64,000 nucleotides of DNA, taken from positions 2,232,001 through 2,296,000 of the forward strand of contig NC_087252.1 in NCBI RefSeq assembly GCF_037042905.1. Direction: 5' to 3'. The notes below the pieces were generated by a model. The model had not been told where the DNA came from. It worked only from the letters and a program-made list of their open reading frames with translations, and made no database searches. The position numbers were made by a program, and so were the translations under genes. This DNA is from Lytechinus pictus (lineage: Eukaryota). Of this stretch, positions 4,101 to 50,600 are shown piece by piece (the first letter of the stretch is position 1; the number at the start of each line of letters is the position of its first letter).

Positions 4101-4698
4101 CTAAGCATTGTTAGCTCATTGTTCTGTATATTGTAAGTTTGAAATGCCTTGGCCTTGAAGTTTTCAGGCCTTGGCATTGGTCTTGGTCTTCCATGCCTTG
4201 GCCTTGGCCTTGGAGGTTTGAGCCTTGACCACAACACTGCTTAACATCGTGCCTGAGTTTCAGGTTACATGATCAAGTTCAAATGTTATTATTTTAAGGT
4301 AAACGAACTTTTGACATGTTAGGGTTATTTGTTGAATGGCCATCATAAATTTAAATACAGTAGTGCGATGGAATGTACTTATGATTAGTGCTCTCGAATT
4401 ATAAGAATTGCAGAGCCTGGCCCAGTGGTCCAGCACTAACAAGAGATCTAAAAGCAAACATTGTACATGTACGTACTTTGAGTAAATGAGACACTGGCGC
4501 ATATTATGTGTAATGGCTATGTATCTGTTTTTATTTCAACTTTTCTGTCGTTTTATCAAGGATCGTAAACGCAACCTTTAATCTTGAAGTGATTGAATAA
4601 ACAGAAAATCATACATACATAATTCAAACGCTATGTTAACAAGAAAGAAATGAACTCGACAGAGGATGGCTTAGTACAAGACAAGTACAGCGATACAA

Positions 4699-4765
4699 AT
4701 GGCGGCCAAACGAATGCATCTCTCTCTGTGGGTCGTATATGCTTTTGTTTTCTACTTCTTTTTAG
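4699..4765 (+). CDS. Copy A exon 1, signal peptide (MAAKRMHLSLWVVYAFVFYFFL)
   Basis: ATG, basic N-region, hydrophobic core, donor G|GTATGT; conserved at 41574-41640. Confidence 0.8.
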
Positions 4766-7700
4766 GTATGTAGTGATTTATTTATTTGCAGTGATTTATT
4801 ATTTGCAGTATTTTGGGGATGTCTAGTGACCGAGGCGTGACTAGGCTGAACGATGTTACGTATAAGCCTAAAGCAGACACATTCATATCAAGGAAGTTTG
4901 GCAAAATTTACGTTGTCACGCCCCACCCATTATATACCTATAAAGCCTCGTTTTGCCTCTATCAAATTCGAAAGGGGAGGGGAGAGGGGGGTCTTTTCTA
5001 GGTTAATGTATTTACTTGTGCTTCTTTTTTCGTCTTGTCCTATAATTTTTATTTCGCTCCAACTGTCAAAGCATGCACGCTAAAGAGTATGAACTAAAAA
5101 AAGTTTTGAAATCTGAATTTGAACGATAACTTCTCCATTTTTTGTGTGGATATTAATGTATGATTAATACAAATGAATAGACCATTTAATTTTCTTTAAA
5201 ATGATGCCCTACTTCATTGATATTGTTTTTCCTACAAGATATATAGGGGATGTACTCGCATGTGACGTCACAAATGAAAAGACAAAATTATCGTAATCTA
5301 AGTATTATCTCTGATTCATTTTCCTAAAAATCTCCAATATAGTTCATGATTTTTCTGCTAATTTCTACAATAAAGTCTAGGTGACCTTTCCCTTTAAAGT
5401 TTCCCTGGCGCTTTTGGTAAATATAATAGATATAACAGGCATTGTTGTTTCTAGAGGCTCTAAAGAATCGCAACTCAACTTAACATTTTACTTACCATTA
5501 CTACATGCCTTAACTGATATAGTGAAATGAACTGAAACACATAATACTGAAAAAACAGTAGCTTATAAACGTTTCCTGTGTCATTTAGGGATACGTGGTG
5601 ACGTTCCTGATGATACTGTCTACACCGAGTTGCACAAAGATGTTAGAATAGGAGACAGTGCAGTATTGACATGCCATTTTCGAGGTTCACCGTTGGCTGT
5701 CTATTGGAAGAAAGGTGATGACCCAAGAAGCGCACCAAACCTTGTATCATGGATTCCTTCTGATGACGTCACCGGTTTATGTGAAGGTCAAAGACCATGT
5801 GAGATCATGGAGATGAATGAAAATCGCTCCTTGGTCATCAAAGAAGTCAGTATGGCCGAACAAGGTCGATACATCTGCAGAGTTTCTAACTACAAGGGAA
5901 TTCTAATACACAACTTCACAGATATCAGACTGTTTTGTAAGTATTTTGATTTCCGACCTGATCATGTCCTCTGCGTTTTACTGCGTAACATCTTAGATTT
6001 AAACATTTTTAACGAGTGCTTTCATATAAGAGTAAACAGTCCCGAATTCAGAACCCTTAGACCCCCACTAAGAACTTAACATGAAGGGGGGGGGGGTCAC
6101 TCAGGTCTGGAAATAAAATGATTTGACCAGATACAGTTGAATAAGAAATACGAGTCAAGAAGATTATGATATTTTAAGAACTCAATCTGTGTTTTTGGAT
6201 GAAACAGCACTGGTTAATGTTGTTGAATTAATTTTCATTCAAATGGTATCCTGCAGCAATGTGAAAATAGGATTGACTATACTGATTTAGCATGTAAGAT
6301 AACCATTGCTGCAATTTAGCAGTGCATGGGAGATTTATCATATACACGTGTGTGAAAATATAAAGTAATCAAGATTTAATGCAGTAACGTAGTAAACTTT
6401 TAGAGGGGACATGGTATCATGGGCCTTTCTATTGCATAGATATGAAATGAGAGAAATAAATTGAATTGAATTCATCTCCATGACAGCGTGAATAAAACGG
6501 TTTAAACAAAAGATTGCTAACCTTTAAAATTTAATGACTCTACTATTAATTTTGATCAGATTCATTTTATATATGTATAGCTGAGCAATGAATAATACAT
6601 TACAATCTCTTCTATTGTAGCTCCTCCTGTAGAACCCTACCCAATCATCAACCAGTGTCAGAGAAAGGAAGGTTCTATGAAATCTACTTCTCCTTCAAAG
6701 GGTTGCAGGATTTCAACCGACACGCCTGTAAACATCACATGCTCAGTCTTCGGATTCTACCCGGATATCAACCTGTTCTTCCTTCATGGGTCTTCAAAGG
6801 TAACCAATTTTAAGAGTATTGAGTGGGAAAATGAAGACGGTTCTAAGAACCAAACCATATTGATAGAAGCTAGAGTCAGTGACCGGCCATATGTATGCAT
6901 TGCGTCAGATGTACCTGGTTCAACAGAGGAGAGAGCCTGGGAGATATTCCTAGATCGAGTCCCTTCAGATGAGACAACGTCAGCCAATCCCGAGAAAGGT
7001 GATATAAGTAGTGCCACAAATCCCGCGAAGATTGGTAAGCAAGCATTAATTAATCGGTATAGAAATGCATTCTTATGTTTTTATTCATTATAGAAACGTT
7101 GCATGTAATTTTAGCAATGATTTTTCCCCATTCAAATTATAACTTTTTAAAAGCCCCCTAATGTGATACAAACTCAGGCACTGACGTTTAAGATGAGATA
7201 ATATTATTATGACATCAACAAAAACTTTGCTCTCACAATCTCTGAAATCGGTGTGAATCGGGTTCCAACTGCTAATTTCAGGTTTAAGATGAATTTGCCA
7301 GTAGAGTTTGAATTTGATTAAAATGTTTCAATGGTTAACAGATATAACATGATTACCTGCAAATCAAAACAAGTGAATATACCTTGTAAGCAATGTGACT
7401 ACACAAGATAAATAGTGTTTAGATGAAACACTAATCTGATAATCACATTATTTAGTAATGATATAAATATACATGAATATAAAACTAAATATAGAATAAT
7501 CTGAATTATTAACCGAACATGTGAATAAAAAAACACGAATCCTTGCACTGAATCTAATAACTGACGGTTGTAGGTAGACCCGATGTCAACTCTGTAAATG
7601 CAAAGGAGCTAATCTGGTCAGTAATCGTTTATTTTCTGTATTATGCATTCATATTGAATATATTTTGTTTATTTTCAACTTATCATTTGATTACAATTCG

Positions 7701-8975
7701 TAATTATTTGTATAAACTTACCTTTTTTGTCTTATCACCTGTTAATAATTACGATTATTATGTTTTATGTGTAATTCATGTATACTAAAATTGGGTGTCT
7801 TTTACTTTGTTCATTTTATTCACGACACGGCCCCAATGCAAATCAGACTCTGTATCTGTTTGGGTTTTTTACCGTGTGAAAATAAAATTTATCTATCAAT
7901 CTTCTCAGAGTGAGATAAGGGACCAGTCCTGTTGGAATGAAATTTCAATATCTCAAATGTAAATTGTAAAAAGATGCACACTTTCTTTAAACTCTCTGTT
8001 GAAAGATTGAAATCTCATTCGATCATGACTAGTCCTTTATCTCACTCTGAAAGGAGTGTGACTATGGACCAGATTAGCTCAACAGCATCTAGAGAATACC
8101 TTTAAATCTAGAACTCTTTACCGCTTTAGAACGAGCTAGGTCTATATGTCATATATACAGTGCGTCCCAGAAAACCGAAACCGAGATTTATCGATTATTT
8201 AGCATTACTTAATCACAAAAACAATAGACAAGTGACCTATTATTGTAAAGCTTAAAATCTCCTCTTTCATCTGAAATTACTTACCTTAGTTTTCATTCAC
8301 TCATGAGTGAGCAAAAACAATTTGAAAAAGGGATACCAAAAAGTCACTTGGCGGGCTGTATCTGGGTTTCGAAGGGAAAACCACATGTTTAAAAAGTTCA
8401 ATATCTGCTCCTTAATTTGATACCTCAATTACAGAAAATGATAGAGAAATAAAAAAGTTCTGGTTACTTGAAATAAGGCTTCAATTTCATAAAATGAAGA
8501 GGTTTTTACGGGCTAGCGTTCAGACTCACTAGACACACCGTTTTGTTGACGATAAGCCATGCATTAAGTATTTTGTTAACCCGTGCGATAGCTTCTGTGG
8601 GAAACCGATGAAAACACGTTTATTTAATGAAATTATGGAAATACAAGCATTGTTTCGATGAAACAGAACTTTTTTACTTCTCGACCATTTTCTGTGATTA
8701 AGGTATCAAATACAAGAGCAGATATTGAACTTTTTAGGCAAGTGATTTTCTTTTTGAAATTCAGATACCCCCTTCAAATGAGTTTTTGGTTTCCTTTCTA
8801 CAAATGTTTTTTGCTCACTCATGCGTGAATAAGAAATAATCTTAGTAATTTCAATTGAAAGAGGAGATTCTAAGCTTTACAATGGTAGGTCACTTGTCTA
8901 TTGTATTTGTGATTAAGTTATGATAAATCATCGATAAGTCTCGGTTTCTGGGACGCACTGTATTTATATATACTG

Positions 8976-9007
<32 letters not shown>

Positions 9008-12000
9008 AGGGTGTGAGGGTGTGTGTGTGTGTGTGTGTGATTTGGTGTGCGGGTGTGTGTATACACATTTGTAAGGAGTAGAGTAGAATTAAGGATGGAT
9101 CAAAGTATACACTATGTTGTAAAACTTTTCGGCCCTGGCCTTCTTCATGTTTTATTTGCTAAACAAAGCAAATAAAGCAAACCATAGAATAAACAACAGA
9201 ACGAACATAATGGTAAATAATACCAAATTAAAGGAAAACCAAAACACATATGAGAAATGTTAAGGTAATAACACGAAATAAGGATCATACTCAACAGAAA
9301 GAAAAAGTAAAGTGAACTAGTATATATATACACACACATACATATATATATAATCCTTCAATTGTTCAAGTTCTAGGAGTAAATTATATTCCGACATTCA
9401 TCATACATGTAACCAAATAAGAGCTGTAATAAAGATATTATAAAGTTCAAAACCTATTTTACCCACACAGTGGTACCAATCCTACTGATACTTGCAGTCG
9501 CCACGGCATGCATGGTATTCTTGTGGCGGAGATCAAGGAAACGGCAGGCCAGACGTCACATAGGTAAGAATTGTAATTCATTCTGCACATTTATGTAATC
9601 TCGGTTTATTGTTATGTAGTATGTATTTAACTCCCTGTTATCCTTTCAGTCATTCCCCTTCACTTGTTTATAAACTCCCCCAATGTCATCTAAGAATCCC
9701 AAAACCCCCAATACCATTTAACTCCTAAACCTTGACCATAAAAATACCAACCCCCATTGACGTCAGCTAACTTCAAGGAACAAAAATTCTAAGAAGTATG
9801 ACTCACACTTCCAGCCCCAGTCACTTGCACAGAGCATCACCACACCCCTTTTACCAGAGAAAGTTTGATAGACAGTTACCTGTAGACCCAGAACAAGTTT
9901 AGATCACTCCCACCTTAAATTGTTATACCCCCAAAACTAATGTAAGACTTTTGATTAGAAGGAGAGAGAGAGAATACTAGATCCACACTCATCGATGTAT
10001 AGACTGACTGACTTCAAGACTTAGACGGCCATCAAATATTATCTTAACTTCACAATCTCAATCTTATACTTCGAAATTAATCATATTCATCGTCTCCTAT
10101 AATATCTGAATCTTCATGTACATCGAACTGTAGCTGAATATTGATGATTAAATACCCAGTGATTTTGAACTGTATAACTTTCTCCAAAGTTTCTTCACTA
10201 CGCTTCCCTTTTAAATTATTATTACCGATCCCAACACGACATTATTACCACAATCGTTTAGTAGTCACCACTTGCATACGGATGGGGAAGGGGATTCTGG
10301 CTTCCAAAATGCTCTATAACATAGGGGGGGGGGGGTTACAATTAATATGTTGCCTATTATGTGAAAATCTGTAACAGAATTCATTTTCCATATAAAAGAC
10401 GCAAATATTTCGCTTGCTCTTTGCACTCGCTCACGACATGTTTGAAAATATATATTATTCAGGGTGTTGCGCCGTTTAAAAATATTTGTTATATTATGCA
10501 ACCGGTACCACTACATCATTGTAATCAATTGGTTTGATACTGATTGGCTAGACTTCCAATATAACACCAGACTATGGAAATAAATTGTAATATCTGAAAA
10601 GGATTCAATTCAGAATAAATCAATTTGCCATGTTTTACACTGTAGGTAGACGTGATGTCGAGGAGTCAGAGTTATTGGTGCAGAAAATGAAGGTACAAGG
10701 TAAGTGAAGCACGAAAACACATTAGCTAAGCATTAAATACGACAGGGAAGGAACTTGTCTTAAAGGACAAGTCCACCCCAACAAAAACTTGATTTGAATA
10801 AAAAGAGAAAAATTCAACAAGCATAACACTGAAAATTTCATCAAAATCGGATGTAAAATAAGAAAGTTATGACATTTTAAAGTTTCGCTTCATTTCACAA
10901 AACAGTTATATGCACATCTTGGTCGGTATGTAAATGAGGGAACTGATGACATCACTCACTCACTATTTCTTTTGTATTTTATTATATGAAATATGAAATA
11001 TTTTGATTTTCTCGTCATTGTCATGTGAAATAAAGTTTCATTCCTCCCTGAATACGTGGAATTCTATTATTTTAAAATGTTGTGCTTCAGGCAAGGAGGT
11101 CATAATTGTCAAATTCGTAAAAAATCAAATATTGTATAATTCAAACAATAAAAAACAAAAGAAATAGTGAGTGAGTGACATCATCAACTCTTTCATTTGG
11201 ATGTATCTGGCTCGTTCATATAACTATTTTGTTAAAAATAAGCGAATCTTTGAAATGTCATAACTTTCTTATTTTACATCCGATTTTGATGAAATTTTCA
11301 GCATTGTGCTTGTCTGATTTTTCTCTATTGATTCAAATCAACATTTTTCTGAAGTGGACTTGACCTTTAAACCTGATTCTTCATCACCATATTATCCAAA
11401 TATATGGCACCACGCCGACGCGCTTGGTGTAAAACAAACAACGTAATCAAATAATAAAAAAAATATAGTGGAAATAACTTAAAACAAAAAAGGGTATTAA
11501 GTTCGACAAAATAGCTTAATTATCATATATCTGTCCAAGCGTTCAAAAAGACAACAGGCCCTTTTTTACACGTTCAGTAATGAACTGCGATAAAAGGAAC
11601 GAAAATGCATGTTCTATCTTAATTGATAGGGAATTATTGTATGAAAATCAAGCGCAGTATAAATCATAGCAAGTTAATGTTTTGAACTAGTTTTTTTTTA
11701 CACATTTCCCATTAACAGGGGTTGTCTCTTTTTATGAACTGTGGCTACTGGCTTATGACACTCCGAATGATGAGATGGCAAAGGTATACGCTGCTCTTGT
11801 TAAGCTTGGTATTACCAATATCAAGGGACAAATGGGTAGAGGATTTGTGTATGATGCTCTTTGTGAATGGAAAGAGAGATCATATGCACCTGACCAACCA
11901 CAGATGTTAAGAGATGCCTTAGAGGAAGTGGGCCTTGAGAGTACATGGCAAGTTATTTATGGTATGTATTTTCATTTCTTCCATTCAATATTAACAAACA

Positions 12001-15000
12001 TAGTTCTTATTCCTATTTACTTGCCATTTTCCTTTGGGTTTTACACCATAGTCTGAATGGGGTTTCCAAAGTTTCCCTTTACATCTACACATTCCCCCCG
12101 AATTACCATTTTAACACCATTATTTAGACATTATTAACACATGTTCTTTCATGGTTCCTTTCCTACTTTTTTCACAATACAGACCAAGTGCGACAGGTCA
12201 ATTATTCTACCAAAGTACCAGAAGGAACATTCGAACAAATCCTGCTTGACCTAAAAGAAAAAAAAGCAATTAAAAAATTCCTTAATAACTTGTGTCAACG
12301 AGAAAATGTAGTCACAGAAATTGAGACAATCAATGACTCAAATGACTCTGAAGAGGGCAATATGGACGTGGAAAAGTCAGCTCCCGCCAAAGCAATCAGT
12401 GCTACCCACGACGGTCAAGAAAACAGAGAAAACACAGCTCCCGCCAAAGCAATCAGTGACACGCATGACGGTAAAGAAAACAAGGAAAACATAGCTCCCG
12501 CCAAAGAAGTCAGTGATATCCATGACGTTGACCAGAACAAGGAAAAGTCAGCTTCCGGCATGCGAAAGTTAAAGGAATGGAATAAAGGTCCTTTCAAACA
12601 GAATCCGTTTGTTCTAGTCAGTCTTGCTCTAGAGAGAGCAGGTTATGTCCATATCTCCAAGACCTTCTTTGACGGTGGGTATCTTTCTATTTGACATAAC
12701 TGTTACACCAGAACGGTTTACTGACATCATTGTGATTGATGTGATGACTTGAGAATGAGTTTTCACAATTATGGTACTTCACTTTAATAAGTTGGTTAGT
12801 TTACACCTGCGGTCCTTTAAAAAAAAAACCTCAAAAATAGTACTTTGTGATTGAGGAAAAAGAACGTTTAAAAAGAATAACTTAAGCCCCGTAACAAAAA
12901 GGTTAGCGATGAATCGCTAATTTGAAAGTACAATTTCGATTTGTTCCTCGTCAGTCTAATCAGCAAAATGCGCATGCAACGATGATCTTGATAGGCCGTT
13001 TCATTTAACAATTCTTCGCTAATCTTTGTGTTACGGGGCCAAGGTTTATCTTCATCAATAGCGTCTCATTATTTTCATGACTGCAGTATTAGTGTTTGCA
13101 TATTTATGCCATTTTACTACCAGAAAAGATTTACGGTATCTGATGATTTTTCGGGAGCACCAAAATATGGCAGGATATATTTGCTTGATCATGTTGAAGG
13201 TACAGCAGAATAACACCTTTTGATAATTTGAAAGTGCAATGCTACCTAATGGTCAGAAAAAAAGGTATACAATCTATCGTTTTAATAATACTATATGAGT
13301 CATGTTGTATATATGCATTTGTGATGAGTAAACAAGGTAAAATGTATTGAATTACGTTTGTCATTATTCGACTGTGAATTACACACTTTAGACATAAATA
13401 AATGTATATTTAATTTTGTTATTTTTTGTTAAATGTATTGATAAATCTACAAAAGAGGCGCAGATATTAACAATCGTCCAAAACATTCCCTTGCAGGCCC
13501 TGTATCCTATTACGAGCTTAGATCATTGATGCACGACCTACATACACCTAGCCTAGAGAAGTTAAGAAAAACAATTTGCGAGCTAGGAATCGACGAGACA
13601 AGTGCAAATAACTTTGGTCCGCAACAAATCTACGACTATCTGTGTCAGTGGAAAGACGGACACCCCCAGGTAGATCAAGGAAAATTATTACATGACGCGC
13701 TTTTAAGAGCCGGTCATGAGGAAGCCTGGTCGAAAGTCTTAGGTAAGTAAAGTAGCAATATTTCGTTTTAACTAATTGAACGTTACATGAACACGAAAAT
13801 CTCATATGCCTAAATAATAATGATAATTCTAATAATAATGATAATAATTATTATTATTATATACCTAAATCTATATTTTACAATTGTACAAGATACCAGT
13901 TTAGTATGCTGCCCTTTCCATATGCAAACTTGAAAACGCAATGTTGACCAAATTACTCCATCATGAGAGAAGGTTTCATTACTAAAATTCCATCTACTCC
14001 CCCTCAAAAAAAAAATTAAAATAAAACATGAAGAAAACAAAACAGGCAAGTATAATGCAAATAAAACAACAAGTTTTGATCATGATCCAGGTGCCGTTTT
14101 AACGAACGAAACAGTTTAATACGCCATTATGTTACAACTGACCTTCTAGCATGTTAATAACGATGGTTGTCATTACTTGCACGCTGTACATGCTGTAAGC
14201 AATCTTTTACATTTGCACAACGCATTTTACCATTACAACAATGCACCCTGGAATACACCAGACGGTGCCCTGTACTCTTTCTAGAAGAGTAAGAAGTAAT
14301 AATGAAAATGATAATAATACTAAAAAACGTATTATTACTTTCATACAAAATGACGATCTACATAAAGACATAAATTATGTTGTTTCCCAAATAGAGATTC
14401 GTTTTGTTACAAATATATAAAACAAAAAGTGAATTTACTATGTGTTGAACCTTCCCCCTTAAGAACAAAGGAAGAAAAAATCAGATGTATGTGAAAGTAC
14501 GTTCAAGAAGATACTCTGTAACGTCACAGCCCCAGCAGTGATACAGCAGCTCCTGAAAAGGCTAGACCCAGACATAGCTAAAGATTTGGATACCTCACTT
14601 GAGACAGATTTTACGCCAAAAGCCTTGGAAGCAATGAAGGAATGGAATGAAAGACCTCTCAATGAAAATAGAATGATCTTGTTAAGCCGTGCCTTGGAGA
14701 AAGCTAAATGCAGGCCGATTGACATGACTTTTCTCTACGGTAAGAGGTGGAGTGAATTTTCTTACACCCATTTTATTTTCGTCTCGCCGGCATAGCAGGT
14801 CGTGACATAGGCGCCGCTTTTCCGACGACGGCGGCGGCGTCGTCGACATTGAAATCTTAACCTGACGTTTTTGAAATGTCATCTTAAATTAAAAGGTATA
14901 AGGACCCATTTCATGAAACATAAACGTAGTGGTAATCAAGTATTACTGAACATCCTGCTTAGCTTTCAGGTAACATGATCAATGTCAAAGGACATTTAGG

Positions 15001-18000
15001 GTCAATGGACCATAAATGACATTTGACCATGTTTGGGTATTTGTTGAATAATCATAACTTTGAAAGTCACAAGATATGGATCTAGTTCATGACAATTGGC
15101 CATACTTGTAAGAGTAATAAAGTATCCCTGAAAACTCTGTGCGAGTTTCAGGTCAGATGACGAATGTTAAATTATTGTTTATGGTTAATGAACTTAAATT
15201 ATATGGGAGGATTAAAAAACAAATCTTAACAGAGGTTAAGTTTTTTTAAATGTCATAACTTTGAAAATATATGAATGTAGTACCTGAACTTTAGACACTA
15301 GACCAATCAACTATCAGCAAATACCCTGCATGAGTTTCAAGTCACATGACCAAGGTCAAACCGTCAAAGGTCATTTAGGGTCAGTGAACTTAGACCATGT
15401 TGGGAAAACATTACAATTTTAACCTAAGGTCAAGTTTTTGAAATGTCTTAACAGAAGGGTATACATTCTTCATGAAACTTTGGCATAACTGCAATCAAGC
15501 ATTACTAAAAATCCTGCCCAAATCTTAGGTCTCATAGTCAAGGTCAAAAGTCATTAAGGGTCAATAAACATAGCATTTTTATTATCATATGAATGGTGCT
15601 TTTGTGAATATGTCGTTTCCAGAGTCAGCACTGCTTTTATTTTGAATTCCCGAATACAGTCAAGACTGCCGTAGGCGTTCCACTTGTTTTAATAAGGATG
15701 GCCTTATACAGTTTACAATTAATAATTTAGCTTATCATGTACGATATTTTTTCTTGATAAATGGAATAACGTCCTTACACCACCTGGAGACTGGCAAATG
15801 ATAAATATGAACATTCATCATTTCATCAATTTCAAAGATTTGATCTATATTGCATTTTACCACGTTTACATTGCACATTCGTTGATATATATAAAACCTG
15901 AAATCTAAAATGGTTAATCCCTGAAATCTATATTTTCACTTTCTCCAAATCAGAAACTATGTCATATTTTGAGCTGTGGTCAATGGTTCATTTCGACTTT
16001 GATACTAATGTGATAATGTTACCATTACGTGATGCTTTGAAGGCGATGGGAGTACTAGGTATAGATGAGACAATTAGTCGGCATGAGCTTTATCATCTTC
16101 TTTGTAAATGGAAGGAAGAACACTCTAATTGCGACCAACGTCTGGTGTTCAAAGTTCACTTGCTTAACGAAGGACTTCACAAAGAATGGGAAAATCTCAG
16201 TGGTAAGTGAAATGGATTTATTTCAATTCTAATGAAGAAAACATAAATATTTTTTTATACATTCTTTAAAGGAATTTATTCTAATAACGGCAGGGAGGAG
16301 GGTGGGAGGTACGAAAGATAAGAAATTATAGGTGTAAAGTTAATTTTCCCACCACGCACATCGTCGGTGCTCTAATTAGTAATAGACACCAGGTCTTAGT
16401 GGAATTTGCGTAACGCGCGCGTGTGTTTATGGTGATTATGTGGAAGGTTCCATGACATTTGTTCAGGCGACAATTTCTCTGTTCTATATTCCCCACACTA
16501 TTCAAATGGCGAACTTTTAATCTATGTTTAACACTTTATCCTACCCTAACCCTAAACATAACATAAAACCATATTGCAACCCTAACCCTACATCTTTGAC
16601 GAAATTAATGTAAAGCCTTGAGCAATTGTCCCATAAACAAATGTGTCACCGTGGGGAAAGGGGATAGGCGGTAGTCCCCTTTCCCCACGGTGACCGCGTT
16701 ACATTTTTTTTAATTAGACTTCTTTTATAATTTGTGTCTATTCTGTAATTGAAATCGGCTGAAGATTTATGAATGACATGGACGCCACCTCCTTATTTCA
16801 GATCTGAGGCTTGGAACAGACCGGATCATTTCTGATGAAACACTGGAACATATTTTGTGGCACTTGAAAACTCCAGGAAAGATCCAACATTTTATTCATA
16901 AGCTGACCAATACCGACCAAGAATCAATACCTGAAGATTCAAATCTACCAGAGAGCATCAGGATTGCTCTGACTAGATTGGAGTTGTGGAAGAAGGGCCC
17001 CATCAATATACATCCTGTGATTCTATTAAGCGAAGCGCTGGAATCAGCAAAATGCTCTAACGTTGCCATGACCTTCTTTCAAGGTAATTATATGAAAGAA
17101 CGAAGGTTCAGTCTTGTCTTTTTATTCAAGCATGCATAGATGATATCAGATATCACATTTGCAAAAAACAAACAAACACAAAAAACGCCTACCGGAGGTG
17201 TGGTCAAGGAATATTATATATGAAAAAAAATATCAGAAAGTTAAATGAGCAACTAGACCAAAAGCTTCAGTCTCTGTATTTTGGTTGTTCCGCTGAACTG
17301 CGTTGGCTTCTCTCTCCAGTACATAGACTGAAGTATTGTTGGCTCATACGTAAAGACAACGTTTTATCAGTAACGTTAGATCTGAAATTCGGCGGAAACC
17401 CGATTTTCGGATCGTTTTTTGTACATCTACATAAAATTTCACATTAAAAAAAATAATTTCATCCAACCAAGAAAATATATAAAATTAAGAAATGTTTGTA
17501 CCTTAGACCGCATTTACCGCAAATTCCTTTCAAATGCTGATCAAAACATAATCATCCTCAGTGGCGGATCCAGGGGGGTGGCGCAGGGGGCGCGCCCCCC
17601 CCCCTAATATTTGAGCGGCGCCGAAGATACACAAACACAAAACCGTTTTCCCTGACTCACTCCAATTCTTGTGTTGCATTTCTCTTGTGGCTCTATTTGT
17701 TACATTTTTACTAGCTTTTATTTGGTTTACCTGGTTAACTCAAATGTTACCACCCTCCATCCCTTTAACGAAATAGACTGTAAATTCATTTAATGTGTTT
17801 TTAAGAAAACTCTCTAAACAGGTGAGGTATACGATGTAAACTTTTTTTTTTCTATCTCTCTCATATTTTTGGCGTTTATGTTCAGTCATTTCTCTCCTTA
17901 TTTTTGGAATGGTGAAACAAAAATGATTTCGTTGTCATTAAACAGGATTGACCGTCGTTTCTTGGGATTTATTTAATAATTTTTTACAGTTTACGACAAT

Positions 18001-27400: not shown

Positions 27401-30400
27401 CGACGGTCAATCCTGTTTAATGACAACGAAATCATTTTTGTTTCACCATTCCAAAAATAAGGAGAGAAATGACTGAACATAAACGCCAAAAATATGAGAG
27501 AGATAGAAAAAAAAAAGTTTACATCGTATACCTCACCTGTTTAGAGAGTTTTCTTAAAAACACATTAAATGAATTTACAGTCTATTTCGTTAAAGGGATG
27601 GAGGGTGGTAACATTTGAGTTAACCAGGTAAACCAAATAAAAGGTAGTAAAAATGTAACAAATAGAGCCACAAGAGAAATGCAACACAAGAATTGGAGTG
27701 AGTCAGGGAAAACGGTTTTGTGTTTGTGTATCTTCGGCGCCGCTCAAATATTAGGGGGGGGGGCGCGCGCCCCCTGCGCCACCCCCTGGATCCGCCACTG
27801 AGGATGATTATGTTTTGATCAGCATTTGAAAGGAATTTGCGGTAAATGCGGTCTAAGGTACAACCATTTCTTAATTTTATATATTTTCTTGGTTGTCTTA
27901 GAATCACCTTTGAATCATAGAATAATCAGTAGAAAATATATTTTCAAAGACATCCTATTAAAGATTTGCAAAGTGACCTTTCAATTTGAGATTTTTTTTT
28001 TGTATGTATATTATAGATATTATTAAAAAAAAAAAAAAAACATAAACAGATGGACTATCACGGGCAAAGCTTTTATTGTAAGATCTTTACAGTGACATTT
28101 TTTTTAAAATGAGTTTTAATTTAAGTCCTTCTTATCCCCATGTAGTCCCAGTTCAACTCCAAAAGACCATTGGAAATGAAGAAGTAAGTGAATTCGTCCG
28201 TAGACTTACAGGAAGGCATCGCAAGCGATTGGCAAACGAGACACCGGCGACTGAAGACAAGAAAATATCCAACTTTGCAGAAGAAAACAATGAAATGTTG
28301 TTTGATGCAAAATCTATGGTTCGAGACTGGATTGAAAGTGAGCAATGCAGTAATTATGAGAAGAGATGTAAACTGGATGACACTCTGATTAAAATTGGTC
28401 GACATGATATGACAGGTAAACATACGATAAAAAATATTGTGATTGACGTATCATATCTCTATTTGTATTTACTTGAAAAGTCTGTTCTTAAAAAAAGGTA
28501 TATAATTTCATTCAACATTAAATATTTCCCCGTTATTGTGAGTCATTTACATGCACATTATATTTAAAAATATGTAAATTTACACATTTGTTTATTTTAG
28601 TAAATTATTTTTTATGTGAGAGTTTAGATGAAACTCTCACATAAAAAGTAGTTTTCTTCCCCATAGTTCCATATACAGGATATTGTATTGTTGTAGGCAT
28701 ATACTTGAAATTTGTGAACATAATCGTCCTGTTTAAAAAAAATGCACGTTCATAGTTCAGAGTTTAAACACTTAAAATAATGATAATAAATAATGATCAC
28801 GATGACGACGACGATGATAATAGTAATAACAACAATTATAATAACAGTAATAATTAAAATTATTGTACAATATACATGCATTTACGTAGCGAAACATCTG
28901 TCTTTACATGTTCTATTGAGCTGCAGGAGATCACTAGACGCTCTACGTACATGTACTACCAATTTAGAGCACTTAAAGCATCAATCGTCCTGATTTCATA
29001 AAATGAGAAGGAAATCTAAATTACTGTTTGTCTTTCTGAAAACTCTCGTTATCGGCAGATTTTTTCAGCACAATTCAGTTTCGGCGAAATACAGATCCCG
29101 AACTCTCGGCAAAATTGCATCCGGAGTCAAAAACATTCCGTAAGTGTTTATTCCATATCTTTCTTCATAACCCTATTCATTCAGGAACTATTATTACTTC
29201 TAAGAAATATCACATTTATAATTTTCGTTACCGTTTTGCAGCGTCCTTTGTTTATTAGTTTTATAACCGAAAGGGCTTTCCTAAATAAAACTGAAATTTA
29301 TAAGTACATATTATTCTTTTTAAATTGTACACATCATTTTTACGTCCTTTGTAGAACACATTTATCGCGTCTATAACAACTATGCCATATATCTAGAAAA
29401 AACCCCTTAAACTTTACACTTTTGAAATGGCTGTAAAATGAAGACGAAACACAATTCTGAGAAGAAAGTTTACATGCGTGAATAATACAACTCACCTTTC
29501 ATATGACGTCAATTTCGTTCAAACAGTAGATCGCCTAAGCTTAATCATTCATTTTTATCAAAGCAGTGAAAATGAGGTTAGGCAGAAATCGATCAGGATT
29601 TCAACATGAACAATTTTTTCGACCATTTGGTAACAAGTGGAAATTAAGTCCATGAGCTATCGATATATTTAAACATCTCCCAGAACCGCATGTTTGTTTT
29701 TTGGCAGTGATTTTAAAGTGTAGAGGGTTACATTTTACACACACGTATTTGTCCTACACCTCGTGTAAACTTTCGATTTTTTAAATTATAATTATGGGAA
29801 CAACTGTGGATCTTGTACTACTACATGATTATAGATCTTGCGACGATCTTCGACGATGATTTAATCAGGCTAAGAATGCTAATGACTTGCCTTGACGAAG
29901 ACATGATGGAAGAGTTCTGCAGGAAAGTAGGTATACCTCTTAAAGTAGAAGGACCGAAAAGGAAGGGTCCAGACATGATTGATATTCGACAATGGAGAGA
30001 CAGTCACATACAGTATACAGTGAAAGAATTCTTCTCAGAAATATCTGGATTCATGACGAATAAAACGAAAGGTAAGGACCGATAGGTGTGTGAGATAGCA
30101 ACTCCAGCCTATTTTTTGCGAATAATTATCTTTCCAGAAGAATTGAACGATGTGCTTCATCATTTGGAGAAATATCTAATTAGGCTTCAAGAAATCAAAC
30201 GTTTTTTCAACTCCTAATTACAACGATGTACAATCAGTACTGTAACACTTTTTTTCTATATCCATTTTTATTATACAGTTTACACGTATAATTGAAGCAC
30301 GTGGCTTATAACTTTTTTTCGCAAATACATACCTGTTCAGATGCACCCTCTTTTGATAAGCTTAAAGATTACGAAGTAAAATCAAAATAATACAAAAATT

Positions 30401-33400
30401 ACTTTACACAACTATTGTAAAAGTTTTATAATTACGTTTCTTAACGACCTAAATTTAAACATTAAAGAGATAATAATGTGTTGTTTTTTCGATGGAAACC
30501 CACATTTTCAGTAAACTTTGTAACGGATCAAGAACTTGATTGGCTGGTTTCTCAAGCGACAATCGATGACAAGTTGGAAAAGTTTACCGATATGAAAAAA
30601 ATCCACTGGAGGAGGTCAAAAAGGATTGCAGGAAAACTTAGGGGTAAGCTAATAGCTGTGACATTCTCGTTATGATGTTAACTATCATCTATACTTTTTA
30701 AGTTAAATTTGACGTTTAAGTTTGAACTAAAATGAAAAATGCCCGAAGAGGAACTTTTTAATAGATATATGAAAATCGAAGTCCTGTTTCGTGTTAAATT
30801 CCAGATGTCAAAACTAAACTAAAATATCTTCTAAATGTACAGTTATACGTAATTGTATTAATTTTTACATTGAATTGTCATGATTATCATTAAATGAAGC
30901 TACACTCAGCTTATTGTCTGAAGACCACGATGAAAAATATCAACCTAAGTTTGAGCGATCACTCTCACAAGAAGGAACAGGCGAAGAAAAGGTCGGTTAT
31001 CATGAAGAATCGCAGGAAGAAGATATATCTTCGTCTGATCCGTGGCAACAACTGAGATTATGGAGAAGAGAGCATGTAGACAAATCTTGTCGAAAGTCAT
31101 TGAGATCCGCTTTCAAATATGTAGGGCTAGAAGGTAATTATACACCATGAAATCCCATTGAAACATCGTTGACTGAGTATTTTTTCTTCATAAGGTGCAC
31201 ACTTATTCATTTCCTTCTTGTCATCATCGGCCACTGGATTCCATGACGAACGAAATATGTAAGATATGAATAAATAAATTGTGATATCGGCTATTTGAGA
31301 GTTTTTATATATTGAGGGAATTGTTGTGGTTCCGGATAAGGCACAGAGAATTAATATTATTTTGTTTGACACGATTTCCCTGTCTTTTGTATTATTTATT
31401 GGCTTTTAGTGATATTTCATTTCATTTATCTCACATTAAATACCCCACAGAAAATTAAAGAAATCCCTTTTTTTAATATGAATGGTATGTTATGTTTTTA
31501 AAGTATATTATTATCCTCATGTTTTTTAAGTAAAACTCAATTTGGCATAATATTTTGACAAATCTGGATTTGTCCAGTNNNNNNNNNNNNNNNNNNNNNN
31601 NNNNNNNNNNNNNNNNNNNNNNNNNNNNNNNNNNNNNNNNNNNNNNNNNNNNNNNNNNNNNNNNNNNNNNNNNNNNNNNNNNNNNNNNNNNNNNNNNNNN
31701 NNNNNNNNNNNNNNTTGTGAATGAACTTCTCAAGGGTGGGGGGGGGGGGGCACTTCCGAGCGGATGTCATGCGCGACCATGGAGTCTCGAAAAGCACCCT
31801 TAACAAGTACTTTCCATATTCTGAAAATGCACCCCTTAAGAAGTATTGGCGTGTAAAACCCTACCCTTATCAAGTATTAGAAACAAAACACTCTTGGCAA
31901 GTATTCCCTGAATCATTGAACCCCTAAACAAGTACATCGATATTCGAATTGATATATGTCACGGACGTCGGTTTTACCTTTACCTACATGTACATCATTG
32001 GGTTTATAACGGCCCCACCTCCCACACCTCCCACAGTGTTGACTGTTGGGGCAATCCTTTATAAAAACATTTTAGTCTTTTTTATACCCTCGCAAATTTG
32101 ACCCTAAACACGTAGCTTTCCTAGCGAAATAGATACCCTTTTTTAATTATTTCAGTTTTTTTGACACCCTTATTACGTTACGTACGCAACGTGCCCTATC
32201 TTGAAAAAGACATCCTGTTTACGTGTTTTGGGGGTCGCGCATGGTATCCACTAGTCAATGTAAATGCCACCCGGGGAACTTCTATGATCAGTTAAAGCTG
32301 AATGAAAGTAGTTGCAGTAAAACACTGATTTCGGGAGAAAGTCTGTAAAACCAAGGTTAAGTATTAATATATCATCGTGGATCTAGATCTGGTACAGTTA
32401 CATAAACTGAACTTTGTGAAATCACAATATATAGCTAAAAACGATCACACTGAAGATCGCCAACACATATAGGCACACGTGGGACAGTGTATTATTGTTG
32501 CTGGAGTAAAGACCCGACGGAAGTGACCGAATCCGCGCTTATTTTGCTTATTTCTCAGCAATTATACAATTTCTTCAAGAATTATTTGGCACATATTTTT
32601 TATTCATAGAAACAGACACTTTGGTGATCATTATATTAAAATCCTGTAAAAAGCCATTTTGAGATCATTCCCACAAATGGAATTTATCTTTAAATGAGAA
32701 AAATGTATTTCTAGTTCGCAAATAAAGATCCTTTATGGACATTTGATTGATTCCAATAGAATGCATCGTAAACAAGACGCCACGGGAAAAGGTGTATGCA
32801 GTTGAAATTGTACAAGCAGCCTTTCACATATTGATGACAGACGTTTATCCGATCATAGAGACACTGGATTTTTACCAGAAGACGATTTCGAAGTACATGA
32901 GGCAGTGCCCTGTTCTAGACAAAGGATCGGTGGATCTTCTGTTTCAGATCTGCAAATATCTTGAGTTGAAGAACAAATCTGAGAGCTACGATCGTCTTGA
33001 TTTCTGTATGAAGCTTACAAATATGGGTTATGTCGATGTTGCAAGATCTATATATCTAGGTAGGTTGTCTCTTCATGATAGGTTATTATGTTGTTTAGGA
33101 ATATATTCAGACTTTGGAAGCCAGAGGAAGGATGTTTTCCGATATAGGGTAGGCCTATCGACCTTTCTCAGAAGTTGAGTCTTTATGGATCGTTATAGAT
33201 ATTGAAAGAAGCAGGAAGTTGGAGGAACAGGGATGTAAAACAACACCTATTGAAAGTAGCTTTTTTTGTTTAACCAAAAAATGTCGACTTATTTATTGCG
33301 TGTCAAAAGTTACAGAAGTCTACTTTCTATTTTTTCTATTTCCCATTTGTTAAAGGAATTGATTTCTCTATGCAGAAGTTAAGGCAATGATTTCTTTTAA

Positions 33401-34830: not shown

Positions 34831-36539
34831 TATAGGAATCTCATGCAAGTGTATTGTTTTTATTGTTAGATATTGATTGGTTCTGTATCATCTGTAAACG
34901 ATGTAAAATCTACCTTTGATGTATGAATTTGATATGTGTTTCATTTGTTATTACTCATCAAGTGTTGGCTAGCGTTGTTCTGTTCAAAATGCAGAATGGA
35001 CGTGCACCAAGCAAACAAATATATCGATATTATTCCAAGCCATTGTACAATTGTGTGTAGACAGAAACAAATAGATTGATTCTTTGTAAACTTTTGAAAG
35101 AAATTTGATGAGTCTTATTTTTCATGAAAACAAGAATACATCAAATGATGAGTCCAGAACTTCTCTAGGTAACATTAATCTCTCCATCCATTTGAGCATG
35201 AGTAAACATTAATGATCTAATGACAGCTTTAGTACCTTAAATCATGTAAAAAGCGTTCGAAATTTAACCAAAAGAATGGTAAAACTAAGTTGCATTATTT
35301 TCACTTAGTTGTTATCCCAGTTTTAACCGCAGCCGATCCTAAAATGTGATGGGAATGAGGACGGAAAGATAAGTTGTAGCAGCAGTAGTAGTAGCTAAGT
35401 AGCGGATGTAATAACATGTGCTTTTATAAGAGAATGGTGTATATGTATAAATGTGTCATCAAAGTTGTTGTTGCCAAAAAAAAAATGTTATCGCAGCTTT
35501 CATAAAAGAATGCAAGATACTAAAGCGCATTAATCATTCGAATGTTTAGATTAAGGGTAGGCGTAATATGATTTCAATCAGTATGACTTCACCATTGTTG
35601 ATTTATTCTCACCACTCTCTTGCCTTATTTCTTTATACATATTGTGTAAAAGACGGTGAGCGATGATGACTGTGTAATGTAAGAATATGTTTTGTGCATA
35701 CAAAATATCCGTAATTTTATTTTAAAACAGGCAATTGTGTATCTCTAAAATAGTGAAAAGGCTGCTTCTTTAACTAAACGTATATTCTCCGATTAAAAAG
35801 TAGGTAAAGTGGTTAGATTAAAATTTTCTCACCATAATAATAGAGCAAGCCCATGGGATCACTTATTCTAAACAGTTTTTTTTTCAAACTGTTCGATTAT
35901 TTTCCATTGTGGTTAAACCAACTAGAATTCCAGTTTCTTCTTTACAGACATTTGGAATCTAATACGGGATTCCGTCTCAGATAATACAAATGCCTACTCT
36001 TTGAGCGATGGTTAAGGCATGGTCTAAGTCTGTGCATAAATTATGGAAGGCAAAACATGTCAAAACTTTGCTGATTGTTTCTTCTCATGACGAATGAGGA
36101 AGAAAATAAATGTGATTGCATTTTTTTTTCACAATACGTTTATGGGGCACCTTTTTGCTATACACACCAAACTGTAAGATACATACCGAAGAGTTAGACT
36201 GCGGTGTAAGATTGAACTCAGGTCAAAGGCAAAAGATGTATACCTATTTGTTGTACATTTTTGGTGTGTGTGGGGTGCGTCTGCATGGATGCATGTTATT
36301 TTTATTTCAATGAATGTCTAAATATTACGTTGTATTAACATCGTATTTTGCAAAGATTGCAGAATCGTTTTTTGCAAAATGGTTATGGGAGGATAATTCT
36401 TTATGTTTTATTTTTTTAAACAAGTGGACACCTAGTTACCAGTAATGCATTGCTGACAAAATCGATCAAAATCAAGTTGGTAATATAAGAAATTTGTATA
36501 TATGTCATTATCTTATCGGATTACTACCTGCTGTATACG

Positions 36540-47600: not shown

Positions 47601-50600
47601 CAATCGATGCCCCAAGAATGTACTTTAAAAAAATTATTTCTTCAGAATTCACAAATACATAGTTATAATACACGTCAAAAGGATCTTATTCGTCAGCCAT
47701 TTGCGAGAACAAATGTCACTCTGACCTCCTTTCATATATCATGTATTAAAGAGTGGAACAATTTACCTGTTGATATAAAAAATAGTAAAACTCTTTTCAT
47801 GATCAAAAGATTATCCAAAACTTACTTTCTTGACAGATTATGATTATTTTCCTTCAATGTGTATTTTAAGTTGATGTATTTGCATTTAACATGTTTAATT
47901 TGATGACCTACTCAGAATTTATGTTTAGTATGTGCATATGTTGGTGAATGTGGTTGTGTGTGGGTGTGTGTGTGTGTGTATATATGTGTGTCTGTAACAG
48001 TTTCCATTCTATTTTTAGCATCTTAACCTTATATATATATTTTTTGTCTCTCCTTTTGTATCTTGTAGATTAGTATATATCCTATGTTGTATGTTAATAA
48101 TCATAAGTATTTCAGGGCCCTACTCACAAGCTTTGCTTTTAAAGGGGTCCTAAAACCAATTCGTCTATGCTATAATCTAATTGATGTATGTTTATGTACT
48201 CATTTAAATTGTATGTATATCCATTTTGATTATGATGTGATGTTTTTGGTTTTGAATAAATAAACTTGAACTTGAAATAAACTCCTATTGGAATTAAATT
48301 TCAATCTCTCAAATGAAAAGCGTAAGAAGATGCACACTTTCTCTCCAAAAAGTAGAAACTCACTCTTGAAAGATTGAAATTTAATTCTATCAGGACTGGT
48401 CCCTCATCTCACTCTAAGAGGAGTGTGATAAGGGACCAGATTAGCTCCACAGCATATAGAGAATACCTTTAAATCTACACGTATAACTCTTTACCGCTTT
48501 GAACGAGCTAGGTCTATGTGTTAGAAAGTATTAAATACGTGTAGGCCTATGTATAAAATAAAATCCTTCAATTGTCTGACTACGAATTCAAATTCTAGGA
48601 GTAAATGATATTCCGACATTCATACATATAACCAAATAAGAGCTGCAATAAAGATATTATAGAGTCTGAAACCCTTTTTCCCCCACAGTGGTACCAATCC
48701 TACTGATACTCGCAGTCGCCACGACAGGCATGGTATTCTTGTGGTGGAGATCAAGGAAACGGCTAGCAAGAAGTCACATAGGTAAGCACTACCATTTATT
48801 CTGCAATAAATGTAATCTCAGTTTTTTTATTACCACACTCTTTTAGTAGTCACGACTGTCATACGGATGGGAGGAAGGGATTATGGCTTCCAAAATGCTC
48901 ACTAACTTAGGGGGGGGGGGAGGAAAGAAATGAAAGGAAATGGGGAAATATGATTTAATCTGTTGAATATTATGTCAAAATCTATAACAAAATTCAATTT
49001 CCATATAAAAGAGGCAATATTTCGCTTGCTCTTTTCACTCGCTCGCGACGTCTTAGAAAATGTCCAATATTTGGTGTATGATTAATACTGAATACTGACG
49101 GACCAGACTCTCCCATTAATACCATACTATATATTGAAATTAATTGTATTAGCTGAAATGGATTCCATTCATCCATTACAATCTAATGGCCAATGATAAT
49201 TTGTAGCAGTCTGAATAAATAAATTTGCCATTTTACACTGTAGGTAAACGTGATGTCGAGGAGGCAGAGCTATTAATGCAAAAACTGAAGGTACAGGGTA
49301 AGTGTTGCACGAAAACACATTCTTTATTTGAAGGAACCTCTTTTAATCACGATTCTACATCACCATTATCGAAATAGATGGCACCACGCCGACGCACTTG
49401 TTGTAAAGCACACATCGTAGTCTAAGAATTCTATAATTTCAAGAGGATACACTCTAAAAACACTGAGTAAAATTTTACCCAAATTGGGTAGAAAGGGAAC
49501 ATGCATTGCGTAAAATTTACATCATATTGGGTATCGTTCTACCCAACCAACATGCATGTTCCCATTTTACCCAATATTGGGTAAACCTTTTTTTAGAGTG
49601 TTTAACATGAAATTGAAAAAAATGTGTTAAATTCACCACAATATTGCTCAAAGGTGACATATCTATCAAAGCTTTCCAAAAGATCAATACTTCTGTATCA
49701 TGAGTTCCGTAATGTATGCGATACAAGAAACGAAAATGCACGTATATGGAATTATTGTATTAAGAAACAAGCGCAGTGTAAATCATAACTAGTTAATGTT
49801 TTGAACTACTATTTTACAAATTTCGTATTGACAGGGGTTGTCTCTTTTTATGAACTGTGGCTACTGGCTTATGACACTCCGAATGATGAGATGGCAAATG
49901 TATACGCTGCTCTTGTTAAGCTTGGTATTACCAATATCAAGGGACAAATGGGTAGAAGACTTGTGTATGATACTCTTTGTAAATGGAAAGAGAGATCATA
50001 TGCACCTGACCAACCACAGATGTTAAGAGATGCCTTAGAGGAAGTGGGCCTTGATGGTACATGGCAAGTTATTTATGGTATGTATTTTCATTTCTTCCAT
50101 TCAATATTAACAAACATAGTTCTTATTCCTATTTACTTGCCATTTTTCTTTGGGTTTTACACCATAGCATGAATGGGGTTTCCAAAGTTTCCCTTTACTT
50201 CTACACATTCTCCGAGAATTACCATTTTAACACCATTATTTAGACATTATTAACACATGTTCTTTCATGGTTCCTTTCCTACTTTTTTCACAACACAGAA
50301 CAAGTGCGACAGGTCAATTATTCTACCAAAGTACCTGAAGGAACATTCGAACAAATCCTGCTTGACCTAAAAGAAAAAAAAGGAATAAATAAATTCCTAA
50401 ATAACTTGTTTCCACGAGAAAATATAGTCACAGAAATTGAGACAATCAATGACTCCAATCACTCTGAAGAGGGCAATAAGAACGTGGAAAACTCAGCTCC
50501 CGCCAAAGAAGTCAGTGACACCCATGACGGTCAAGAAAAGAAGAAAAACACAGCTCCGGCCAAAGCAATCAGTGCTACCCATGACGGTCCAGAAAACAAG

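What the first reader, a model, noticed from the sequence alone, without database searches (positions are those of the whole stretch)
11719..17083. Alternating (alpha-beta)x3 array of two distinct death-fold subtypes
Seen: exons 6, 8 and 10 share S[FY][YF]EL...G...Y..LC.WK...DQ...G....W. Exons 7, 9 and 11 share TF/LE.IL...I..(F/L)...L...W..(G/R)P....L.S.ALE.A......TF. A two-exon cassette was therefore triplicated long ago, since the units are now very divergent. Established: tandem death-fold pairs (caspase-8 tandem DED, RIG-I 2CARD) act as rigid units that nucleate filaments. Inference: the alpha-beta pair is the functional module, possibly an adaptor-receptor-like heterotypic pair fused in cis.
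Basis: partly seen in the sequence, partly recalled or inferred. Interest (0 to 1): 0.72.

Follow-up and report, generated by a model that had tools for sequence, protein, structure and literature searches.

The report
Alternating death-fold pairs in urchin receptor
Six consecutive exons of a sea-urchin membrane-receptor gene each encode one small "death-fold" signalling domain of two alternating types (A-B-A-B-A-B). The two-exon A-B pair is the unit that this urchin-only gene family has copied one, two or three times, but its function is untested.

Summary
Window 11719-17083 (+) holds six AG/GT-bounded, phase-1 exons, all multiples of 3 nt, that translate exactly to residues 327-921 of Lytechinus pictus XP_063959102.1, an "uncharacterized protein". 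They alternate between type alpha (29-35% identity among themselves) and type beta (30-34%).

AlphaFold2 models with structure searches show both types are death folds:
- Alpha is closest to classical death domains (FADD, PIDD, TNFR1; Z 8.2-8.7).
- Beta matches vFLIP DED1 (Z 8.3) and the RIPK1 death domain (Z 7.8) about equally.
- Pfam recognises neither type above threshold.

In this genome alpha is always followed by beta. Paralogues carry 3, 2 or 1 pairs (5, 2 and 9 genes). Units group by position in trees of both types, so a two-exon cassette was triplicated before the five three-pair genes arose.

The "rigid pair" idea has predicted support only. The alpha-beta model has pTM 0.85 and a confident junction. 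The beta-alpha model has pTM 0.70 and a weak junction. A separate-chain docking test gave no answer.

The gene encodes Ig-Ig-TM-(alpha-beta)x3 plus six more death-like exons, and is duplicated in the window. Detectable relatives are echinoid only, and no paper describing the family was found. The scan had noted this gene and the beta1 repeat on this same window. This is a new variant of a known kind, of moderate interest.

The parts
11719..11961 (+). Gene A exon 6 = alpha1 death-fold unit (P0001 residues 327-407)
   Evidence: AG/GT-bounded, 243 nt, phase 1; exact translation match to P0001; alpha HMM E 1e-42
12183..12674 (+). Gene A exon 7 = beta1 unit, with three copies of a 19-aa repeat in the loop before helix 4
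   Evidence: the insert lies where the beta2 model has its low-confidence loop
13497..13742 (+). Gene A exon 8 = alpha2 unit. In the alpha2-beta2 model this unit matches death domains (FADD Z 8.6/8.5, PIDD 8.2)
   Evidence: Pfam Death below threshold (E 0.045); spliced join 13742|14464 in contigs
14464..14739 (+). Gene A exon 9 = beta2 unit, a death fold (vFLIP DED1 Z 8.3, RIPK1 DD Z 7.8)
   Evidence: ESM Atlas structural neighbours are Death-domain clusters, TM 0.66-0.74
15954..16202 (+). Gene A exon 10 = alpha3 unit (TNFR1-DD Z 8.7, PIDD 8.6, FADD 8.3)
   Evidence: spliced join 16202|16802
16802..17083 (+). Gene A exon 11 = beta3 unit. The RefSeq model reads on into the following intron
49835..50077 (+). 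Gene B alpha1 (duplicate copy)
50299..51189 (+). Gene B beta1, with about ten copies of the 19-aa repeat
51986..52231 (+). Gene B alpha2
52979..53254 (+). Gene B beta2
54455..54703 (+). Gene B alpha3
55462..55743 (+). Gene B beta3 (protein identical to gene A beta3)
4699..10701 (+). Upstream exons of gene A: signal peptide (4699-4770), Ig (5573-5938), Ig-like (6614-7033), transmembrane (9470-9568), juxtamembrane (10642-10701)
   Evidence: tblastn of P0001; Pfam Ig_3 4.6e-9 on the exon, 3.1e-11 on the protein. Boundaries are approximate
28142..34839 (+). Six further death-like exons, the probable 3' half of gene A (units 7-12)
   Evidence: tblastn of the tail of paralogue P0027; weak Pfam Death E 0.042; language-model neighbours are Death clusters at 0.84-0.86, a lead only

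Best explanation
The stretch encodes the membrane-proximal half of the cytoplasmic tail of a type I Ig-superfamily receptor of sea urchins (Lytechinus pictus LOC135154841). Its architecture is signal peptide, two Ig domains, a transmembrane helix, then death-fold domains encoded one per phase-1 exon.

The first six domains alternate between two anciently diverged death-fold types. Alpha is death-domain-like. Beta is a death fold whose subfamily cannot be assigned between DED and DD. The alpha-then-beta pair, encoded by two symmetric exons, is the evolutionary cassette. It has been copied in frame to give paralogues with one, two or three pairs, and the three positions were already distinct before the five three-pair genes arose.

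Inferred, not shown: alpha and beta pack into a compact two-domain body. After ligand-driven clustering of the Ig ectodomains, the multi-domain tail serves as a multivalent platform that seeds helical death-fold assemblies with cytosolic adaptors, kinases or caspases. The number of pairs would set valency or threshold.
For: Gene structure and exact coding match. Ig and TM exons.

Alpha fold: in the alpha2-beta2 model, residues 1-87 match FADD DD at Z 8.6/8.5, PIDD DD 8.2, RIPK1 DD 7.6 and AnkG DD 7.2. Alpha3 in the second model matches TNFR1-DD 8.7, PIDD 8.6 and FADD 8.3.

Beta fold: beta2 residues 1-92 match vFLIP DED1 at Z 8.3 (rmsd 2.2, 74 aligned), RIPK1 DD 7.8, p84 DD 7.2 and MC159 6.7. 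Nearly all of the top 50 rows are death-fold proteins. The ESM Atlas model of beta2 has TM 0.66-0.74 to Death-domain clusters. Alpha and beta profiles align helix for helix (hhalign 68.6%, E 4.6e-5).

Cassette: strict alpha-then-beta order in 16 loci with 3, 2 or 1 pairs. Position-specific starred clades appear in both trees. Alpha1 and beta1 of the three-pair genes are each sister to alpha1 and beta1 of the two-pair genes.

Compact pair: AF2 alpha-beta mean pLDDT 89.1, pTM 0.85, junction above 90, against beta-alpha 86.5, 0.70, junction 61.

Constraint and expression: dN/dS about 0.5 between paralogues with intact frames. Spliced joins at the predicted exon borders appear in public contigs.
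Against: Pfam Death is below threshold for alpha (14-19 bits against 22.6) and absent for beta. PDB sequence searches are blank, so fold assignment rests on predicted models with Z 8-9, a range where helical bundles can match by chance.

The pTM contrast is confounded by alignment content, and no PAE or coordinates were available. The beta-alpha linker is also short and length-conserved. The whole tail may therefore be semi-rigid rather than built of discrete pairs.

One Diadema protein has an extra beta (alpha-beta-beta-alpha-beta-alpha-beta).

No functional, expression-pattern or interaction data exist. The library type of the run with spliced contigs is not on record.
Confidence: 0.7

Rival explanations
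1. The alternation is only a footprint of duplication history. Two neighbouring, already different death-domain exons were copied together by unequal crossing-over between introns. There is no special alpha-beta interface, and the tail is either beads on a string or a uniformly stiff rod in which every junction is equivalent.
For: All exons are phase 1 and multiples of 3, so any block of exons can duplicate in frame. The beta-alpha junction is as short and length-conserved as alpha-beta. The beta-alpha model still reaches pTM 0.70. The separate-chain test gave no support (uninformative). Diadema has a beta-beta junction.
Against: Across 16 loci the copy number changes only in whole alpha-beta pairs, and single-pair genes keep exactly alpha-beta. 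AF2 is more confident in alpha-beta than in beta-alpha, both overall and at the junction.
Confidence: 0.25
2. The array is decaying or non-functional: lineage-specific junk exons, a pseudogene, or an assembly artefact in which two haplotypes were placed in tandem.
For: Copies A and B differ by only about 2-12% in nucleotides, with an N gap between them. That range is within sea-urchin heterozygosity (my own knowledge). dN/dS is about 0.5, and some single exons lie near or above 1 on very few changes. The RefSeq model ends in an intron. One paralogue has a broken beta2 and another a split alpha1.
Against: All 12 unit exons in the window are open with intact splice sites. Position-specific clades persist across five genes at dS about 0.27. 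Spliced contigs exist. Homologues occur in four echinoid species. A haplotype artefact would affect only the A/B duplication, not the alpha-beta array itself.
Confidence: 0.05

Closest known systems
Classical death domains of FADD, PIDD, TNFR1, RIPK1 and Fas (Pfam PF00531)
   Same: The alpha units superpose on them at Z 7-8.7, rmsd 2.3-3.6 A over 77-88 residues. They share the helix 4-5 pattern (W ... L..AL..G). They sit in the cytoplasmic tail of a type I receptor, as in TNFR1, Fas and p75NTR.
   Different: Sequence is below the Pfam threshold. The helix-3 region is a loop in the model. The ectodomain is Ig rather than TNFR cysteine-rich repeats. The domains occur in an array of up to 12 rather than singly.
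Tandem DEDs of caspase-8, cFLIP, vFLIP and MC159
   Same: Two different death-fold domains are fused in cis and predicted to form one compact body. Beta's best single-domain match is vFLIP DED1 (Z 8.3). Tandem-DED entries top the Foldseek list.
   Different: The whole-pair superposition is poor (TM 0.31-0.36, rmsd about 16 A), so the relative orientation differs. No RxDL motif is visible in beta helix 6 (the motif itself is my own knowledge) and there is no Pfam DED hit. Here the pair is repeated up to three times and tethered to a membrane receptor.
RIG-I / MDA5 tandem CARDs (2CARD)
   Same: Two death-fold domains in cis.
   Different: Only single-domain matches were found (Z 5.3-6.4). The subfamily, context and copy number all differ.
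UNC5 and p75NTR-type receptors, and Ig-TIR receptors (IL-1R family)
   Same: A type I receptor with an extracellular binding module and a cytoplasmic homotypic-interaction domain. UNC5 also combines Ig domains with a death domain (my own knowledge).
   Different: No ZU5/UPA, TSP or TIR was found. There are many death folds instead of one. The family is restricted to echinoids as far as HMMER can see.

Membership tests
Death-fold superfamily (DD/DED/CARD/PYD six-helix bundle) | Alpha unit adopts the antiparallel helical death fold | tested here: met
   AF2 models with pLDDT about 90. VIA-align Z 8.6/8.5 (FADD), 8.2 (PIDD) and 8.7 (TNFR1-DD) over 77-88 residues. Most top rows are death-fold proteins. 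These are predicted models, and the helix-3 region is modelled as a loop.
Death-fold superfamily (DD/DED/CARD/PYD six-helix bundle) | Beta unit adopts the death fold | tested here: met
   Model residues 1-92 of the beta-alpha model match vFLIP DED1 Z 8.3, RIPK1-DD 7.8, p84 DD 7.2, MC159 6.7 and CARDs about 6. ESM Atlas model TM 0.66-0.74 to Death clusters. hhalign to the alpha profile 68.6%, E 4.6e-5.
Pfam Death (PF00531) by sequence | Score at or above the gathering threshold (22.6 bits) | tested here: not met
   Alpha scores 14.3-19 bits (E 0.002-0.045). Beta has no hit.
DED subfamily (PF01335), considered for beta | Pfam DED match and the conserved RxDL / charge-triad motif | tested here: not met
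   No Pfam DED hit. Helix 6 of beta reads P-x-D-(R/M)-T-F-F, not RxDL. The structural preference for DED over DD is within 1 Z, a tie. Language-model neighbours include DED clusters at 0.78-0.79, a lead only.
Rigid tandem death-fold unit (tDED / 2CARD type) | A fixed, buried interface between the two domains in cis | tested here: inconclusive
   Alpha-beta pTM 0.85 with junction pLDDT above 90, against beta-alpha pTM 0.70 with junction 61. No PAE or coordinates. Complex test: no answer.
Rigid tandem death-fold unit (tDED / 2CARD type) | Same inter-domain geometry as known tandem DEDs | tested here: not met
   Foldseek full-length alignments to 8yd7, 2bbr, 7pdj and 3cl3 give TM 0.31-0.36 and rmsd about 16 A.
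Rigid tandem death-fold unit (tDED / 2CARD type) | Nucleates helical filaments or oligomers of partner death folds | not testable with these tools
   Needs biochemistry or cell assays.

The most novel reading that the evidence does not exclude
The (alpha-beta)n tail is a single-chain, pre-organised segment of a helical death-domain assembly. The cis alpha:beta contact would stand in for one of the asymmetric inter-subunit contacts seen in Myddosome- or PIDDosome-type towers. A receptor with one, two or three cassettes, plus six more death folds, would then carry a built-in nucleus of graded size. Cassette copy number would be an evolvable dial for signalling threshold in an echinoid-specific immune or recognition receptor family.
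Probability: 0.15. Interest if true: 0.8.

Novelty: new variant of a known kind. Interest (0 to 1): 0.55.

Why it matters
Death-fold signalling normally works by bringing single domains, or at most pairs, from different proteins into helical assemblies. Here up to twelve death folds appear to sit in one receptor chain, if the downstream exons join it. Two sequence-invisible subtypes are locked in an alternating cassette whose copy number varies among paralogues.

If the predicted compact alpha-beta pair is real, it would be a natural heterotypic death-fold pair fused in cis, with a geometry unlike the known tandem DEDs. That would make it a useful object for studying how assemblies are nucleated.

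It also adds an unannotated, echinoid-restricted receptor family to the sea-urchin recognition repertoire. Both subtypes are missed by Pfam, so counts of death-domain genes in these genomes are underestimates.

Tried and rejected
- Pfam on single exons gave only one sub-threshold Death hit.
- PDB sequence searches with single units and with shallow or deep profiles gave only designed repeat proteins and noise.
- The Foldseek PDB search of the pair had no hit at E 0.001 or better. The list was still dominated by death-fold entries.
- The ESM Atlas shape search of the whole pair returned only a single-domain p75NTR match and noise.
- Complex prediction with alpha2 and beta2 as separate chains gave 'no answer' (score 0.00). 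The alignments were not used and the partner fold was uncertain. This counts neither for nor against binding.
- The first shallow alpha-versus-beta profile comparison was weak (9%). Deeper alignments raised it to 68.6%.
- Literature searches for an Ig-TM-multi-death-domain receptor in echinoderms found no description. The library lacks many subscription papers, including the 2006 sea-urchin genome companion papers on apoptosis and immunity.
- Rejected: alpha plus beta as one roughly 175-residue domain. Each half independently matches a complete death domain.
- Rejected: P0026, an ankyrin-kinase protein at E 1e-4, as a relative. It shows repeat-type weak matches only.
Full report
**What is there**

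The window is G000:C8:2232001-2296000 of an 812-Mb genome. The protein encoded here is identical to XP_063959102.1, "uncharacterized protein LOC135154841" of the sea urchin Lytechinus pictus (P0001, 939 aa).

- 11719-11961
- 12183-12674
- 13497-13742
- 14464-14739
- 15954-16202
- 16802-17083

All are bounded by AG and GT. All lengths are multiples of three and all are in phase 1. Joined, they translate exactly to P0001 residues 327-921.

Contigs of one public run carry the joins 13742|14464 and 16202|16802 with GT..AG ends, plus a paralogue-like 11961|12185 join. Spliced copies of these exons therefore exist. The library type of that run is not on record.

**The alternation is real**

Exons 6, 8 and 10 (alpha) share 29-35% identity.

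HMMs built from the three alpha or three beta units hit only these exons and a second set at 49.8-55.8 kb, at E 1e-37 to 1e-44. The training exons match by construction, so the second set is the independent evidence. Nothing else in the six-frame window scores better than E 0.4.

In a joint tree of 71 units, beta is one side of a branch with 99/99 support. Alpha monophyly is not rejected (p-AU 0.40).

**Both types are death folds**

Sequence methods barely see this. Pfam Death scores 14-19 bits on alpha units against a 22.6-bit cut-off, and gives nothing on beta. PDB sequence searches are blank.

Structure prediction does see it. An AlphaFold2 model of alpha2-beta2 from a 12-row alignment of natural pairs (A3) has mean pLDDT 89.1 and pTM 0.85. 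A model of beta2-alpha3 (A4) has pLDDT 86.5 and pTM 0.70. An exhaustive structural search over PDB representatives gave these matches:

| Unit | Match | Z |
|---|---|---|
| alpha | FADD DD | 8.6 / 8.5 |
| alpha | PIDD DD | 8.2 |
| alpha | TNFR1-DD | 8.7 |
| alpha | RIPK1-DD | 7.6 |
| alpha | ankyrin-G DD | 7.2-7.6 |
| alpha | Fas DD | 7.1-7.2 |
| beta | vFLIP DED1 (rmsd 2.2 A, 74 residues) | 8.3 |
| beta | RIPK1-DD | 7.8 |
| beta | p84 DD | 7.2 |
| beta | MC159 | 6.7 |
| beta | several CARDs | about 6 |

Nearly every one of the 50 rows for the second model is a death-fold protein.

Further support for beta:
- The ESM Atlas's own model of the beta2 segment has TM 0.66-0.74 to Death-domain clusters.
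- Deep alpha and beta profiles (A5, A6) align helix 2 to helix 5 with hhalign probability 68.6%, E 4.6e-5.

I conclude that alpha is a divergent death domain. Beta is a death fold whose subfamily cannot be fixed, because DED and DD matches tie within one Z unit. Beta has no Pfam DED hit, and helix 6 reads P-x-D-(R/M)-T-F-F, which is not the RxDL motif of DEDs. These fold calls rest on predicted models and on Z values of 8-9. That range is not conclusive alone for helical bundles, but the uniformity of the hit lists argues for it.

**The cassette**

Searching the whole genome with both profiles, then extracting units from fetched loci, shows strict alpha-then-beta order at 16 loci:

| Pairs per gene | Genes | Location |
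|---|---|---|
| 3 | 5 | window A and B; C8 2.108, 2.171 and 2.217 Mb |
| 2 | 2 | C8 2.08 and 2.02 Mb |
| 1 | 9 | elsewhere on C8 and C10 |

In separate maximum-likelihood trees, alpha1, alpha2 and alpha3 of the five three-pair genes form clades by position (100/99, 96/94, 95/92). So do beta1, beta2 and beta3 (98/97, 100/99, 100/99). Alpha1 and beta1 of the three-pair genes are each sister to alpha1 and beta1 of the two-pair genes (80/65 and 93/70).

A two-exon cassette was therefore amplified as a pair, and the triplication predates the five-gene expansion. dS between window A and the 2.108-Mb gene is 0.27. The order of origin of the three positions is unresolved.

A Diadema antillarum protein (P0008) reads alpha-beta-beta-alpha-beta-alpha-beta. 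Its alpha units group together on long branches. This hints at independent amplification but proves nothing.

dN/dS over the six units is 0.46-0.52, which indicates moderate constraint.

**Is alpha-beta a rigid module?**

The only direct evidence is AlphaFold2 confidence:

| Model | pTM | Junction pLDDT |
|---|---|---|
| alpha-beta | 0.85 | above 90 |
| beta-alpha | 0.70 | about 61 |

- No PAE or coordinates were returned.
- The beta-alpha alignment had only five truly paired rows.
- The beta-alpha linker (TFF-x-G-x-x-S-F-x-E-L-W) is itself short and length-conserved.
- A pTM of 0.70 is not low.

The separate-chain complex test gave no answer. The predicted pair does not superpose on known tandem DEDs (TM 0.31-0.36, rmsd about 16 A). 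If the pair is real, its geometry is its own.

**Context**

Upstream exons encode a signal peptide, an Ig domain (Pfam Ig_3 4.6e-9 on the exon, 3.1e-11 on the protein), a second Ig-like domain, a transmembrane helix and a short juxtamembrane segment.

About 11 kb downstream, at 28142-34839, lie six more death-like exons. They match the C-terminal half of one-pair paralogues such as P0027. Support for their fold is a weak Pfam Death hit at E 0.042 and language-model neighbours at 0.84-0.86, which are leads only. The RefSeq model instead reads into the intron after exon 11.

The whole gene is duplicated about 38 kb downstream. Window 654-20542 matches 38411-58878 at 82-98% nucleotide identity in the collinear blocks. 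Copy B's tail lies beyond the window, in L015.

**Range and literature**

A profile search of 1.84 billion representative proteins found only 27 hits. The named ones come from L. pictus, L. variegatus, Strongylocentrotus purpuratus and Diadema antillarum, and all are "uncharacterized". I found no paper describing this family. The searchable library is incomplete. General death-domain expansion in sea urchins is known (my own recollection of the 2006 genome papers).

**Mechanism**

The architecture is shown. The function is inferred by analogy with death-domain receptors. Ligand-driven clustering of the Ig ectodomains would bring the multi-death-fold tails together. The tails would then act as multivalent seeds for helical death-fold assemblies with cytosolic partners. 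Cassette number would tune valency. None of this is tested.

**Verdict**

This is a new variant of a known kind, with two Pfam-invisible death-fold subtypes in an alternating, copy-number-variable cassette. Interest is moderate.

Noticed in passing
window 654-20542 versus 38411-58878; N gap 31579-31714: The whole receptor gene is present twice in tandem, about 38 kb apart. Nucleotide identity is uneven: about 82-89% in several 5' blocks, 98.5% around beta3, and the beta3 proteins are identical. An assembly gap lies between the copies. This could be a recent duplication with gene conversion, or two haplotypes assembled in tandem.
   Followed up: partly
window 12330-12560 and 50480-51065: A 19-aa polar repeat sits in the loop before helix 4 of beta1 only. 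There are three copies in gene A and about ten in gene B. The beta1 exon of the 2.108-Mb paralogue is longer still (347 aa). Beta2 and beta3 lack the repeat.
   Followed up: partly
window 28142-34839: Six further death-like exons of distinct types lie downstream of the array. They match the tails of one-pair paralogues, and copy B's equivalents lie beyond the window (L015:3162-9042). The RefSeq model of gene A stops after beta3 by reading into the intron, so the annotated protein may be truncated or an alternative isoform.
   Followed up: partly
G000:C8:2219872-2220072 (L003:5873-6073) and C8:2168831-2171941 (L002): In the 2.217-Mb paralogue, beta2 is split over two overlapping frames and lacks the helix-4 region. 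In the 2.171-Mb paralogue, alpha1 is in two pieces 2.8 kb apart. These may be decaying copies or extra introns.
   Followed up: no
window 14777-15500 (intron between beta2 and alpha3): Contig depth in the public run is very high here (12,000 to 105,000), with many internal joins. This looks like a high-copy short interspersed repeat inside the intron.
   Followed up: no
P0008 (Diadema antillarum XP_071495348.1): The unit order is alpha-beta-beta-alpha-beta-alpha-beta, with no detectable Ig domain in the model. This is the only case seen of two beta units in a row.
   Followed up: partly
window 27732-27895 versus 56124-56285: A 164-bp inverted match at 96% identity lies between the region downstream of gene A and that downstream of gene B beta3. 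It is probably a shared repeat.
   Followed up: no
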